DNA of 63,990 bases, filler included, from Reticulomyxa filosa (Eukaryota; Protista; Foraminifera): the NCBI GenBank assembly GCA_000512085.1. It is 12 parts of 12 records of this genome, joined end to end, with 100 filler letters (N's around TTAATTAATTAA, not from the genome) between each part and the next. Parts side by side here need not be neighbours in the genome. Positions count along the whole stretch, not along the records: positions 1 to 14,879 come from ASPP01004819.1; 11 more parts are not named here. One strand, written 5' to 3'. A model generated the notes under the pieces. It had not been told where the DNA came from. It did no database searches and saw only the letters and a program-made list of their open reading frames with translations. Shown here in pieces: positions 6,886 to 9,414 of the stretch; position 1 is the stretch's first letter; each line of letters begins with the position of its first letter. Both the position numbers and the translations under genes were made by a program.

Positions 6886-7110
6886 ATGGCGTCTTCACAC
6901 CACATATTAACTTTGAAGTGTCCCGTCTCCAGTTGTCGAAAGCTATTGGTCTACACAACAGTCAAAGCTGCCTACAGCAGTTCATCTATCACTAGTGCAT
7001 CGTGTGATAACTGTGAAGCCATTTAGATAGCTACGACGCAGTGTACCATTGTTCAATCGCTCCATGTATTCAATATCACGATCAAAGCTACGACCTATGC
7101 GTCAAATGCG
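6886..7110 (+). pseudogene. N-terminal Cys-rich ZZ-like zinc finger
   Basis: MASSHHILTLKCPVSSCRKLLVYTTVKAAY...SCDNCE/(frameshift ~7019)HLDSYDAVYHCSIAPCIQYHDQSYDLCVKC, which fits the CDxC...YxC...YDLCxxC ZZ pattern. Confidence 0.6.
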
Positions 7111-7244
7111 CAGTGGAAATTTTCGCTCAAAGCTCATCACTAACGCCACGCTGCAACCCAGTTCCCTCAATTGTCGACGATCCATTAGACAAAAATGGTT
7201 TTTCCAACGATATATACAGCACGCCGCATCTACAGCACAAACAT

Positions 7245-8235
7245 AGCATCAGTATTTATGCGAGAATCGGAAGCCAAATCAAAACGAAAAGGGTAAGTAG
7301 TGTATCCTTGTCGACAAAGATACAATAACAGCTGTTGGGCCATCAAGCAAAATTTATTCCTTACAATCCTTGTTTCGCGATCATGCATCAAATGAACTGT
7401 GTAATACCATTATCGATCAAATATTGCATAACGTCATTATGGGATTCAACGCTGTGTTGTTTGCCTATGGTCAAACAGTGATAGTAAGACATTTTCAATT
7501 ATAGGCGATCACAACAAACGGAAATCAGAATGCTGCCCTACATGTTGCGCTTAGTGTTGAACAAGCCAGTTATCTCACGAGTATCCCTCTCCGCAGTAGA
7601 AGCATTCGGACAAATCGTCAATCGTATTGAATTTTTCGACTAGTTGGATCAGCGCAATCAAAATTTGGATTGGTCGAAGAAAATCAGATCAACCACAATT
7701 AACATTGATAAGCTTATCCAAACCGTTATCGAAAACACAGAAGACTTATATTCAATTGTCCAAAACGCAAGTCAGTCTTCAAACATCGCATCAACAGGTA
7801 AAAATCCAGATTCTTCGCGTGGACATGTCGTTTTTTTGGTTTCAATTACATCCTCCAGCCCCAATGAACGTACATAATCAACAAAGTCCTTCATTGTGGT
7901 GGATTACTCCGGAAGTGATGGAGATATTGCATTCGGCGATGATTTCGTTCATTCAACTGACAAGAAAACATTACAGTGTCGAAGACTAGAAGCAGGATGC
8001 ATCAACACATGTTTGTCGCAATTACAAGTCATGTTCAAAGAACTGTGTGAACAAGGAAAATTAACACAGTCAAAGGGCGATAGATTACTTAAGTTTTTGC
8101 ACTCATTTATTAACGCACATACACATATATCCTTCTTGTTTACATTATCGCCTGCCGCAATCAATGCTAAAGCATCGGAGGCTACGTTAAAATTTGCATA
8201 CAATGCAGGAGCGATTCAAGTCCAACCAATACATG
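7245..8235 (+). pseudogene. Kinesin motor domain (frameshifted, premature stops)
   Basis: All motor motifs occur in order: ISIYARI; VIMGFNAVLFAYGQT(g)dsKTFSIIG P-loop at ~7440-7505; MLPYML; switch I TGKNPDSSRGH; switch II VVDYSGSD; EAGCINTCLSQL; TLSPAAINAKASEATLKFA. In-frame stops at 7641 and 7875; frameshifts near 7310, 7478 and 7510. Confidence 0.9.
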
Positions 8236-8446
8236 TCACTTCATCACTCAGAAAGCAAATCCCCTCCAGACGTACTCAAACCAATCAGCGACAAGAAGTC
8301 CAAGAACATATAACTCTCGTATATTCGGTAGAGCAAACAAACATAGCAACAGTTTTATGCACATAATATTTCGTCGCATCTGGCCAACGGATTCGAAAAC
8401 CAGCTAGATGAATTAAGTCATTCGAAGGTGCAAATCCCGACAACAA

Positions 8447-9397
8447 ATGAACTCTTTTCCTCAACATCCTGATTACGACAAAAATTTTTACTCTTGCACT
8501 GTTCCTCATTGTCCGCAGCAAGGTGTAATTTGGTCCGTCGTTGAAAGTCTTAACACGCACATGAATCAACACGCGCAGAAGAAAATCGCCGGCGAAGTCC
8601 CTGTCGATTATCTGCAGTCATTCTTCAGAATTATTTGTTTACACTGCCGAACAACAGTTTCAGTCGCACATGCAAAAAACTGAATGCACAAAAAATGACA
8701 GAACGCTCAAAAGTTCTTCCAGCCATCGCAATCAGTCTCCAATCATCCCCAACAGAGCTCACAAATTGCTGACATTCATTGGATCCTTTCTTCACCAACA
8801 GCAATTGCAGTTTGTCCTGTGAGATTGATACATCGAGTTCCAAAATGCTTACGATCAGACGTTGCGGCGTGTGCGTCACATTGTCTCCAAGATATTAATA
8901 CATACAACAATAGCATCGCATGGAGTCACTGGGCTATACTCACCAGAGTCATTTTGTAGAAACCAAACAGTGGAAGTCCCAAAACCAACCGAATGATTAC
9001 TTTGATTCTGGATAGAATTCGTCTTTGGAAGCACAATGACCTCCAGTCATTATGGAACGAGTTTATGAATCATTCCCGAGAGATTTCGTCCTACTTGTTA
9101 AAACCCGCACGAGCTCCCACCAAATCCTATAAACTTCGATCATGTCGCAATTTTGCAGCATTGGGTGAGTACTCCAATGCTTTTCGAGCACTTCACTCCC
9201 AAGGACGACCGACATATGACAAGGGCACAATAGATTCACTTAAAGCGAAACATCCAAGCGAAGAAGAACCAAAGATTGATTTAGAGTCATTTATTTCACC
9301 TCCAAGAAATCCATTTACGAAAGAAGAAGTAATTGCATACTTACAGAAGCTAAGTCGTTCTTCTTACGGTGGTCCTGACTTTTTCTCCTGGACATGA
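8447..9397 (+). pseudogene. Zinc fingers plus pre-RT/RT N-terminal region of a CRE/R2-type non-LTR retrotransposon ORF
   Basis: One frame with three nonsense codons: CTVPHC..LNTHMNQH, PVDYL..RIICLHC..N*MHKK*, IHRVPKCLRSDVA, AWSHW, DRIRLWKHNDLQSLW, AALGEYSNAFRALHS, TIDSLKAKHP, EEVIAYLQKLSRSSYGGPD. It ends just before the RT core. Confidence 0.75.
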
Positions 9398-9414
9398 TCC
9401 CTTTTGAAGTGGAA

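What the first reader, a model, noticed from the sequence alone, without database searches (positions are those of the whole stretch)
6886..9400. Candidate kinesin-carrying non-LTR retrotransposon (ZZ finger - kinesin motor - Zn fingers - CRE/R2-type RT)
Seen: on one strand, with no introns and no poly-A/T spacer, the sequence encodes a ZZ-like finger and then every kinesin motor motif in order (GFNAVLFAYGQT, NPDSSRGH, VDYSGSD, EAGCIN, SPA..EATLKFA). About 200 bp after the motor ends, and only 80 bp after the TAA at 8364, come CCHH/CCHC fingers and the RIRLW..LW / GEYSNAFRAL / LKAKHP / SYGGPD blocks. Both halves are similarly decayed and share a base composition distinct from the AT-rich flanks. 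Established: those blocks precede the RT core in RLE-type (CRE/R2-like) elements. I know of no such element encoding a cytoskeletal motor. Inference: the element captured a kinesin, either as ORF1 or as a fusion. That could haul its RNP along microtubules between the many nuclei of a reticulopodial syncytium, and could also seed kinesin family expansion.
Basis: partly seen in the sequence, partly recalled or inferred. Interest (0 to 1): 0.92.

Follow-up and report, generated by a model that had tools for sequence, protein, structure and literature searches.

The report
Retrotransposon family that encodes a kinesin
The window holds a dead, cut-off copy of a jumping gene (an R2-like retrotransposon of the foraminifer Reticulomyxa filosa) whose single protein carries a kinesin motor domain fused in front of its reverse transcriptase, a combination I found in no paper and which has been kept by selection.

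Summary
Window 6757-9422 (+) is a decayed, 3'-truncated copy of a multi-copy element. It has a 5' UTR, a ZZ-like Cys/His region, a complete but broken kinesin motor (Pfam PF00225 in three frames), C2H2/CCHC fingers and the N-terminal extension of a reverse transcriptase (RT). The RT core itself is missing: homology stops at 9422.

Other copies in the same genome (R. filosa) continue into RVT_1, a CCHC plus R2-type restriction-like endonuclease, a 3' UTR and a poly(A) tail. Five family-1 copies share the kinesin-to-finger junction. Five 5' ends have unrelated flanks.

Two further R. filosa families (about 65% nt identity or less) and two contigs from other public assemblies have the same order. 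One of these is an intact 1816-aa ORF. Open frames run from motor into fingers and from fingers into RT, so it is one fusion protein.

Between families, synonymous sites are saturated while kinesin dN is 0.30 (RT 0.32). Within family 1, kinesin dN/dS is 0.14-0.19.

The motor derives from a distinct short cellular kinesin family whose host genes have introns and are only 35-45% identical. Microtubule transport of the RNP is inference only. The literature searches found no such element.

The parts
6757..6885 (+). 5' terminus and 5' UTR of the element. It starts with an A11 run followed by TTCTTTTAATTAATGTTTTGATAACC.
   Evidence: Five copies (window, C35467, C3350, C39855, C38362) begin homology here, each with an A-run and an unrelated upstream flank.
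6886..7244 (+). Start codon (MASSHH...) and ZZ-like Cys/His region (CPVSSC ... CDNC ... YHC ... YDLCVKC). There is a frameshift near 7020.
   Evidence: tblastn to the 350-aa open frame of C35467 (L029:553-1602): 96% identity over 6874-7020, then continuing in another frame. The pattern is conserved in family 2. There is no Pfam ZZ hit.
7245..8231 (+). Kinesin motor domain, complete in extent but broken by frameshifts and stops. Features present: beta1 SISIYARI; a P-loop split by a frameshift (GQTVIV / SNSDSKTF); switch I NPDSSRGH; switch II decayed to DYSGSD; EAGCINTCLSQLQ; SPAAINAKASEATLKFA.
   Evidence: Pfam PF00225 on three pieces in profile order. Open homologous frames in other copies score E 2e-30. 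tblastn map.
8232..8464 (+). Linker between motor and fingers. It carries a roughly 71-nt deletion at 8341/8347 that brings the TAA at 8364 into frame, and a 77-nt deletion at 8465.
   Evidence: Alignment A1 with four other copies, in which the extra segments are read in frame (L028:1102-2022) and are not GT-AG bounded.
8465..8680 (+). C2H2-type finger (YSCTVPHCPQQG...HTHMNQH) and CCHC-like finger (CLHCRTTVSVAHAKN...).
   Evidence: Open piece 8417-8680. 83% identity to L028:1102-2022. The same block precedes the RT in all families.
8681..9422 (+). N-terminal extension of the RT (RIRLWK..LW, GEYSNAFRAL, LKAKHP, SYGGPD). The copy is cut off at 9422, about 100 nt before RT motif IPKPDGSPRPIAIG of intact relatives.
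   Evidence: In C23056, C45651, C36893, C24392 and C46452 the sequence continues past this point into RVT_1. The window junction shows 1-nt microhomology.

Best explanation
Window 6757-9422 is a dead copy of a non-LTR retrotransposon family of Reticulomyxa filosa. It has frameshifts, stops, two internal deletions and has lost its 3' half.

The intact element is about 4.9 kb. It encodes one polyprotein, in this order: a ZZ-like Cys/His region, a kinesin motor domain, a linker, C2H2/CCHC fingers, the reverse transcriptase, and a CCHC knuckle with an R2-type restriction-like endonuclease. A roughly 230-nt 3' UTR and a poly(A) tail follow.

Shown:
- the domain architecture;
- multiple dispersed copies;
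- the same architecture in at least three diverged R. filosa families and in two other assemblies;
- purifying selection on the motor equal to that on the RT;
- descent of the motor from a distinct short cellular kinesin family.

Inferred:
- The element moves by target-primed reverse transcription, like R2.
- The motor stays attached to the RT that binds its own RNA. It ties or moves the ribonucleoprotein along microtubules, either to reach nuclei in this giant, microtubule-packed syncytium or to reach chromatin via the spindle.
For: Kinesin (E 1.2e-25 and 2.1e-30) and RVT_1 (E 6.7e-21 and 6e-19) lie on the same contigs and strand.

Open frames bridge the domains:
- L052:1-747 spans the ZZ-like region into the motor.
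- L052:1266-2030 spans the end of the motor into the fingers.
- L054:3920-5581 spans the fingers into the RT.
- L066 is a 749-aa frame with one TGA, running from motor to fingers to RT N-terminus.
- L055 is an intact 1816-aa ORF with Kinesin plus RVT_1.

Classification:
- The best solved relatives of the RT are R2Bm and R2Tg (E 9e-8).
- The C-terminal profile A3 hits the R2 CCHC/RLE region (E 5e-6).

Transposon marks:
- 3' ends carry A8-A18 tails.
- Five 5' ends have unrelated flanks.
- One copy is 5'-truncated.

Selection:
- Family 1 against family 2: kinesin dN 0.30 with saturated dS (omega about 0.10, bootstrap 0.07-0.21); RT dN 0.32 (omega about 0.13).
- Within family 1 at unsaturated dS of 0.29-0.34: kinesin omega 0.14-0.19.
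- The window copy against its closest relatives: omega 0.6-1.0, as expected for a dead copy.

Motor integrity:
- P-loop, switch I and switch II are intact in the better copies.
- An AlphaFold model of the natural motor P0009:440-800 (pLDDT 70) matches whole kinesin motor domains at TM 0.6-0.76.
Against: - No copy in this fragmented assembly is intact from end to end, and no contig holds both ends, so target-site duplications and current activity are not shown.
- No RNA or read data could be obtained.
- The motor lacks the canonical L12/alpha5 tubulin-binding motif (VPYRDSKLT), which is replaced by GxGLRRxLHP. Its cellular parent family shows the same replacement, so microtubule binding is assumed, not shown.
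- Two R. filosa gene models (ETO34218, ETO04439) have degenerate switch II or P-loop motifs.
- In the RT tree, kinesin-bearing elements are interleaved with relatives that lack a kinesin. None of the 80 best metagenomic RT relatives has one. A single capture is therefore not established; the AU test merely does not reject it (p 0.28).
Confidence: 0.8

Rival explanations
1. The kinesin domain is kept by the element but does not act as a transport motor. It might work as a static microtubule or spindle anchor that gives access to chromatin in closed mitosis, as an ATPase that remodels the RNP, or as a decoy that perturbs host kinesin function.
For: The canonical L12/alpha5 tubulin-contact motif is absent. 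No coiled-coil dimerisation region follows the motor in the element, whereas the cellular parent has one. Some families have degenerate catalytic motifs.
Against: P-loop, switch I and switch II are conserved in families 1, 2 and 3, in P0058 and in P0009. The family-specific L12/alpha5 motif is conserved too, which argues that the parent family's activity is retained. The degenerate cases come from gene models of decayed copies.
Confidence: 0.35
2. These are host genes rather than transposons: a domesticated RT-kinesin fusion gene family, of which the window holds a pseudogene.
For: The GC content resembles host exons. Some copies are annotated as kinesin genes (ETO34218.1 'kinesin family member 4'; P0175 'kinesin family member 13A').
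Against: There are many dispersed copies at 84-97% identity with frameshifts and stops, poly(A) tails, unrelated flanks and 5' truncation. The endonuclease and RT catalytic motifs are conserved, there are no introns, and three copies are clustered in one 16-kb foreign contig.
Confidence: 0.05
3. The arrangement is a chance juxtaposition or a one-off chimera: an R2-like element landed beside a host ZZ-kinesin gene, or the contig is misassembled.
For: The assembly is very fragmented. The window copy has an odd 3' truncation at 9422 fused to an unrelated pseudogene. No reads were available.
Against: The same junctions occur in at least 5 independent contigs of family 1, in two more diverged families, and in two other public assemblies, with open frames across the junctions. 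Host members of the parent kinesin family are intron-bearing and only 35-45% identical.
Confidence: 0.02

Closest known systems
R2 and other RLE-bearing non-LTR retrotransposons (R2Bm, R2Tg; the R2/R4/CRE/NeSL/Hero group)
   Same: A single ORF with N-terminal zinc fingers, an RT with an N-terminal extension, and a C-terminal CCHC knuckle plus PD-(D/E)xK-type endonuclease. There are no LTRs. The best solved matches for both RT and endonuclease are R2 proteins.
   Different: A complete kinesin motor domain (plus a ZZ-like region in families 1 and 2) lies upstream of the fingers. The element has a poly(A) tail and A-tract junctions, not a strict rDNA or spliced-leader target. Clade placement within the RLE group was not determined.
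Dualen/RandI-type elements with extra enzymatic domains (from my own knowledge: Kojima and Fujiwara 2005)
   Same: A non-LTR element that has added unusual enzymatic modules to the RT/RLE core. The foreign relative P0009 also carries an OTU-like Cys-protease motif (DGSCLF) upstream of its kinesin.
   Different: No APE or RNase H was seen here. A cytoskeletal motor is not among the accessory domains I know of for any retrotransposon, and it was not found in the literature searches.
Short cellular kinesin family (about 400 aa; P0165-P0183; R. filosa RFI_09859 and contig C16037)
   Same: Shares the family-specific motifs TGKNPxSSRGH, DCAGSEGE, RRLEAGxINTGLSQLQ, GxGLRRxLHP and LFTLSPxxNNxKxTESTLKFA.
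   Different: The cellular genes have introns, a C-terminal coiled coil and no RT. They are 65-81% identical between R. filosa and environmental relatives, but only 35-45% identical to the element's motor.
Other selfish or parasitic entities that carry their own kinesin: giant viruses (PMC8407384, PMC11915834) and the maize Ab10 drive kinesins KINDR/TRKIN (PMC7462060)
   Same: A selfish genetic entity encodes a kinesin for its own benefit.
   Different: Those are large DNA viruses or a chromosomal drive haplotype with free-standing kinesin genes. Here the motor is fused to the replication enzyme of a 5-kb retrotransposon.

Membership tests
Non-LTR retrotransposon, RLE (R2-like) type | Reverse transcriptase domain with a YxDD box | tested here: met
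   RVT_1 at E 6.7e-21 (L027) and 6e-19 (L054), with AAYHDD. The best PDB matches are R2Bm and R2Tg. The RT core is not present in the window copy itself, which is truncated at 9422.
Non-LTR retrotransposon, RLE (R2-like) type | C-terminal CCHC knuckle followed by a restriction-like (PD-D/ExK) endonuclease | tested here: met
   Profile A3 has invariant or near-invariant C, C, H, C, RH, E, RPAD and D..V. It hits the RLE region of R2 proteins (positions 933-1036) at E 5e-6 to 2e-4.
Non-LTR retrotransposon, RLE (R2-like) type | N-terminal DNA-binding zinc finger(s) before the RT | tested here: inconclusive
   The C2H2 and CCHC patterns are conserved in all families. Pfam zf-C2H2 scores only E 0.09. 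UniRef names ETO12343 a C2H2-type domain protein.
Non-LTR retrotransposon, RLE (R2-like) type | No LTRs; 3' poly(A) or simple tail; dispersed copies, some 5'-truncated | tested here: met
   A8-A18 tails in three copies. Unrelated flanks at five 5' ends. A 5'-truncated copy in C45666.
Non-LTR retrotransposon, RLE (R2-like) type | Target-site duplication and/or a specific target site | tested here: inconclusive
   No contig holds both ends. All 5' junctions lie in A-tracts. One 5' flank (C35467) and two 3' flanks (C23056, C45563) lie in the same AT-rich repeat, of which window 10991-11520 is an unoccupied copy. Other flanks differ.
Kinesin superfamily motor domain | Pfam PF00225 above the gathering score, with the whole domain present | tested here: met
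   Window piece 7644-7874 scores 34.7 bits against a cut-off of 29.3. Three window pieces cover profile positions 39-326. L029 scores 106 bits.
Kinesin superfamily motor domain | P-loop GxxxxGKT/S, switch I SSRxH and switch II DxxGxE | tested here: met
   GQTGSGKT / GQTGRGKT / GSSGSGKT; NPDSSRGH; DCAGSEG / DLAGSEG in the better copies. In the window the P-loop is split by a frameshift and switch II has decayed to DYSGSD.
Kinesin superfamily motor domain | Kinesin fold | tested here: met
   An AF2 model of P0009:440-800 (pLDDT 70, pTM 0.74) matches kinesin-1, -3, -5 and -7 motor domains in Foldseek at E about 1e-17 and TM 0.6-0.76 over about 325 columns. The model is of the foreign relative, not of an R. 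filosa copy.
Kinesin superfamily motor domain | Canonical L12/alpha5 tubulin-binding motif (VPYRDSKLT) | tested here: not met
   It is replaced by GxGLRRxLHP in all element copies and in the cellular parent family.
Kinesin superfamily motor domain | Microtubule-stimulated ATPase or motility | not testable with these tools
   This needs biochemistry.
ZZ-type zinc finger (PF00569) | Match to the Pfam ZZ profile | tested here: not met
   No ZZ hit at E <= 0.1 for L029:553-1602 or L052:1-747. Only the C-x2-C ... YDLC-x2-C pattern is present and conserved between families 1 and 2. It is absent from family 3 and from P0004.
CRE clade specifically | RT phylogeny grouping with CRE1/CRE2/SLACS/CZAR | not tested

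The most novel reading that the evidence does not exclude
A lineage of R2-like retrotransposons has made a cytoskeletal motor part of its replication protein, so that the RNP moves itself along microtubules instead of hijacking host motors. The same architecture, under selection, occurs in several families of a giant syncytial foraminifer and in at least two other unidentified organisms, one of them next to telomeric repeats. Because kinesin-less relatives are interleaved in the RT tree, the same kinesin family may even have been captured more than once.
Probability: 0.4. Interest if true: 0.92.

Novelty: new variant of a known kind. Interest (0 to 1): 0.85.

Why it matters
Retroelements and retroviruses are known to depend on host microtubule motors. 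An element that encodes its own motor, fused to its RT, would be a new strategy. It would also be a natural experiment on how a retrotransposon RNP finds nuclei in a centimetre-scale syncytium.

There is a practical consequence. The reported amplification of kinesin-domain genes in R. filosa has been read as an adaptation to intracellular transport (cited in PMC4758236 and PMC13746701). That count includes transposon-borne motors that GenBank names as kinesins, for example ETO34218.1. At least about 15 of roughly 110 kinesin-bearing contigs are of this kind. This is a lower bound taken.

The finding also identifies a compact, divergent kinesin family: a cellular parent plus transposon offshoots. 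It lacks the canonical tubulin-contact motif and is worth testing biochemically.

Tried and rejected
- **Introns.** I first took the two segments of about 71 and 77 nt that the window lacks for spliced introns, which would have made the window a retrocopy of spliced RNA. I rejected this. Two copies start the first segment with AT, the second would be GT..CC, and both segments are read in frame in L028.
- **Giant-virus origin of the motor.** The closest roughly 400-aa kinesins sit on compact metagenome contigs beside RCC1, ubiquitin and T4-type RNA ligase genes. I rejected a viral origin as unsupported. These genes run into AT-rich read-through at one conserved position, which looks like an intron. 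R. filosa itself also has multi-exon orthologues.
- **Sequencing runs.** None was listed for the window stretch, so there is no read check of the junctions and no RNA evidence.
- **Earlier findings.** This resource was not open to the session.
- **Glöckner et al. 2014.** The paper is not held, so I could not check whether it mentions RT-kinesin fusions.
- **Homology search with the P0009 motor region.** It returned only P0009 itself plus one ordinary kinesin.
- **Direct PDB search with the P0009 C-terminus.** It found nothing. The profile A3 was needed instead.
- **First RT tree with the mixture model.** It did not finish, so an LG+G4 quick tree was used.
- **Kinesin tree.** It has long branches and a single outgroup, so monophyly of the element motors is unresolved.
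Full report
**What is in the window.** The piece is contig C4819 of a 101.9-Mb, 50,809-contig assembly. These are the published figures for Reticulomyxa filosa (table in PMC13746701). 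The closest database proteins are R. filosa ETO entries.

The genome background is AT-rich, at GC 0.23-0.28. A GC 0.38-0.44 island runs from about 6750 to 10250.

Pfam finds the kinesin motor (PF00225) in three consecutive stop-free pieces:
- 7301-7501, profile positions 39-84;
- 7644-7874, profile positions 148-216, at 34.7 bits against a cut-off of 29.3;
- 7878-8363, profile positions 244-326.

The pieces lie in different frames, so the copy is dead. By tblastn against open frames of sister copies, the coding sequence starts at the ATG at 6886, changes frame several times, and stops being recognisable at 9422.

**It is a repeat family, and the other copies supply the RT.** A DNA search of the whole genome with 6750-10250 gave 29 matches at 74-92% identity. 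Local blastn resolved these into blocks 6757-8341, 8347-8465 and 8465-9422.

Four other contigs carry the motor, the linker and the fingers in the same order: C23056, C45651, C26460 and C28361. In five contigs the sequence runs on past the point equivalent to 9422 into ...ARLIAIPKPDGSPRPIAIG... and AAYHDD. These are C23056, C45651, C36893, C24392 and C46452.

Pfam gives Kinesin at E 1.2e-25 on L028:1-741 and RVT_1 at E 6.7e-21 on L027:1936-2997. After the RT comes a conserved domain with a CCHC knuckle and RH / E / RPxD / D..V residues. A profile of it (A3, 40 sequences) hits the endonuclease region of solved R2 proteins at E 5e-6 to 2e-4. The best solved relatives of the RT itself are R2Bm and R2Tg.

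The ORF ends at ...LQKGNAIAICTHCNF. It is followed by about 230 nt of UTR and then A18, A10 or A8 in three copies. Five copies share the 5' end, an A-run followed by T-rich sequence and AATAAATGTTTCGATAACC. Their upstream flanks are unrelated. C45666 is a 5'-truncated copy. This is the anatomy of an R2-like (RLE-type) non-LTR retrotransposon of about 4.9 kb.

**The kinesin is part of the same protein.** A second family, about 65% nt identical, lies on C33883, C25431, C44427, C25221 and C33884. It has the same order and far fewer breaks:
- L052:1-747 reads from the ZZ-like region into the motor.
- L054:2597-3433 is a 279-aa open motor with GQTGRGKT, NPDSSRVH and DCAGSEGES.
- L052:1266-2030 reads from the end of the motor through the linker into the fingers.
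- L054:3920-5581 (554 aa) reads from the fingers through the RT.

A third family (C26273, L066) is one 749-aa frame with a single TGA. It runs from the motor through the fingers into the RT's N-terminal region.

A HMMER search of 1.84 billion representative proteins with the finger-plus-RT piece returned R. filosa proteins first. Among the hits:
- ETO34218.1, named 'kinesin family member 4, partial', has Kinesin plus RVT_1.
- P0009 is an uninterrupted 1816-aa ORF with Kinesin (profile 30-319) plus RVT_1. It lies on a GC-56% contig assembled from run SRR30503367.
- P0058 lies on a 16-kb ENA contig (ERZ25039484) that holds three kinesin(+RT) copies.

The arrangement is therefore a fusion rather than a separate ORF1. 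It is not confined to one contig, one family or one assembly.

**Selection.** I compared natural open frames only.

Between families 1 and 2:
- Synonymous sites are saturated.
- The kinesin has dN 0.30 and 61% amino-acid identity.
- The RT has dN 0.32 and 62% identity.
- The finger and pre-RT region is 50% identical.
- Where dS is computable, omega is about 0.10 for the kinesin (bootstrap 0.07-0.21) and about 0.13 for the RT.

Within family 1, at unsaturated dS of 0.29-0.34, kinesin omega is 0.14-0.19 (L029 against L004, L007 and L008). RT omega is 0.24-0.27.

The window copy against its nearest relatives gives 0.6-1.0, as expected for neutral decay after insertion. The motor has thus been under purifying selection as strong as the RT while the families diverged.

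The method is NG86 on pairwise alignments, with saturation between families. The numbers are indicative, not precise.

**Where the motor came from.** The element's motor is only about 19-25% identical to solved kinesins, but it is not an orphan. A word-indexed search found many kinesins of about 400 aa (P0165-P0183) from metagenomes, metatranscriptome catalogues and protist transcriptomes. They are 40-45% identical and share peculiar motifs:
- TGKNPESSRGH;
- DCAGSEGE;
- RRLEAGxINTGLSQLQ;
- GNGLRRVLHP, in place of the canonical VPYRDSKLTRLL;
- LFTLSPSxNNAKATESTLKFA.

R. filosa has its own members of this family (RFI_09859; contigs C16037, C2657, C7360, C10479). These are 65-81% identical to the environmental proteins. 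They are split into GC-rich exons by AT-rich introns and are followed by coiled-coil exons. They lack the ZZ-like region and any RT.

In a tree the cellular proteins form a group (support 92/94). The element motors sit outside it on long branches. Holding the element motors together as one clade is not rejected (AU p 0.28), but it is not shown either.

In an RT tree, the R. filosa kinesin-bearing clade and P0009 fall in one well-supported 11-member clade. However, they are interleaved with relatives that have no kinesin. P0036, for example, has 5.6 kb of upstream sequence without one. None of the 80 best metagenomic RT relatives has a kinesin. The alternatives are one old capture followed by losses, or repeated capture of the same kinesin family. 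This remains open.

**Is the motor complete?** The better copies keep beta1 (IYARIRP), the P-loop, switch I, switch II, the switch-II helix and alpha6. An AlphaFold model of the natural motor of P0009 (pLDDT 70, pTM 0.74) matches whole kinesin motor domains at TM 0.6-0.76 over about 325 columns.

Two features argue for caution. The canonical L12/alpha5 tubulin contact is replaced, though this is also true of the cellular parents. There is also no coiled coil after the motor. Two gene models from decayed copies (ETO34218, ETO04439) have degenerate switch II or P-loop motifs.

**State of the window copy.** Compared with its relatives it has:
- several frameshifts, including one inside the P-loop;
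- in-frame stops;
- a roughly 71-nt deletion at 8341/8347 and a 77-nt deletion at 8465; these are ordinary deletions, not introns;
- loss of everything 3' of 9422.

At 9422 it abuts the 3' end of a minus-strand pseudogene, tail to tail and with 1 nt of microhomology. The pseudogene belongs to a small family of secreted Cys-rich proteins and is cut two codons before its stop. A junction that abrupt looks like a real rearrangement rather than a repeat-induced misassembly. No reads could be obtained to check this.

**Target.** All 5' junctions lie in A-tracts. The 5' flank of C35467 and the 3' flanks of C23056 and C45563 belong to one AT-rich repeat, of which window 10991-11520 is an unoccupied copy. 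The other flanks are different. Target preference is therefore undecided.

**Mechanism.**
- Shown: the architecture, multiple copies, poly(A) tails, R2-like RT and endonuclease, and selection on the motor.
- Inferred from established knowledge of R2-type elements: target-primed reverse transcription by a protein that binds its own RNA.
- Inferred, with no test here: that the fused motor attaches or moves the RNP along microtubules. I put this near 0.4-0.5. A non-motile microtubule or spindle anchor, or another ATPase role, is the main alternative.

**Novelty.** Five full-text searches found no report of a retrotransposon encoding a kinesin. I could not read Glöckner et al. 2014 or consult Repbase, so prior mention cannot be excluded.

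Papers cite R. filosa's amplified kinesin complement as an adaptation to transport in a huge cell (PMC4758236; PMC13746701). Part of that count is transposon-borne. GenBank names such copies 'kinesin family member 4' and 'kinesin family member 13A'.

**Method note.** I built no consensus and no repaired frame. Broken genes were read through only with X, and only for the tree.

Noticed in passing
window 9422-10238 (-): Pseudogene of a small R. filosa family of secreted Cys-rich proteins of about 230 aa. These have a signal peptide (MANFFSLALTFGLVFSSLSS) and a C-terminal hydrophobic tail. Paralogues on C22771, C21677 and C24495 are 74-80% identical and intact. The window copy has a stop and a frameshift and is cut two codons before its stop, where it meets the retrotransposon.
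   Followed up: partly
window 10243-10439 (-) and 10991-11520 (+): An AT-rich dispersed repeat. The same repeat flanks other copies of the kinesin element: the 5' flank of C35467 and the 3' flanks of C23056 and C45563. Window positions of about 11312-11353 therefore look like an unoccupied insertion site.
   Followed up: partly
L055 (Logan contig of SRR30503367), 1-1283 and 6735-6908: The intact 1816-aa kinesin-RT ORF of an unidentified GC-rich organism ends about 150 nt before (CCCTAA)n at the contig end. It is preceded by three repeats of about 400 bp that each hold short TTAGGG runs, so it may be telomere-repeat-associated. The ORF also has a SAP-like motif and an OTU-like DGSCLF motif before the kinesin.
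   Followed up: no
L056 (ENA ERZ25039484 contig_74177, 16 kb): Three kinesin(+RT) element copies of different divergence lie clustered in 16 kb, two on one strand and one on the other. Their motors are 52%, 39% and 32% identical to the cellular kinesin P0166.
   Followed up: partly
L057-L059 (metagenome contigs) and L061 (R. filosa C16037): A conserved, short (about 400 aa) cellular kinesin family lacks the canonical VPYRDSKLT tubulin-contact motif. In two metagenome contigs it lies head-to-head with an RCC1-repeat gene. The gene calls run into AT-rich read-through at one conserved position, which is probably an intron.
   Followed up: partly
window 1312-2376 (-) and 4343-5395 (-): Two paralogous intronless WD40-repeat ORFs of 354 and 350 aa (WD40 E 1.6e-45 and 1.8e-45).
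   Followed up: partly
window 12299-13261 (-): A 320-aa ORF with a caspase domain (Peptidase_C14, E 1e-20).
   Followed up: partly
window 14000-14879 (+): A second GC-rich block (GC 0.42-0.45) with an ORF carrying a C2H2 finger (E 7e-6) that runs off the end of the piece. It may be the start of another element or gene.
   Followed up: no
window 8341-8347 and 8465: Two deletions of similar size (about 71 and 77 nt) lie only 120 nt apart in this copy. Both begin just before a GTTYGACAT motif in the intact copies. I have no explanation for this beyond coincidence.
   Followed up: yes
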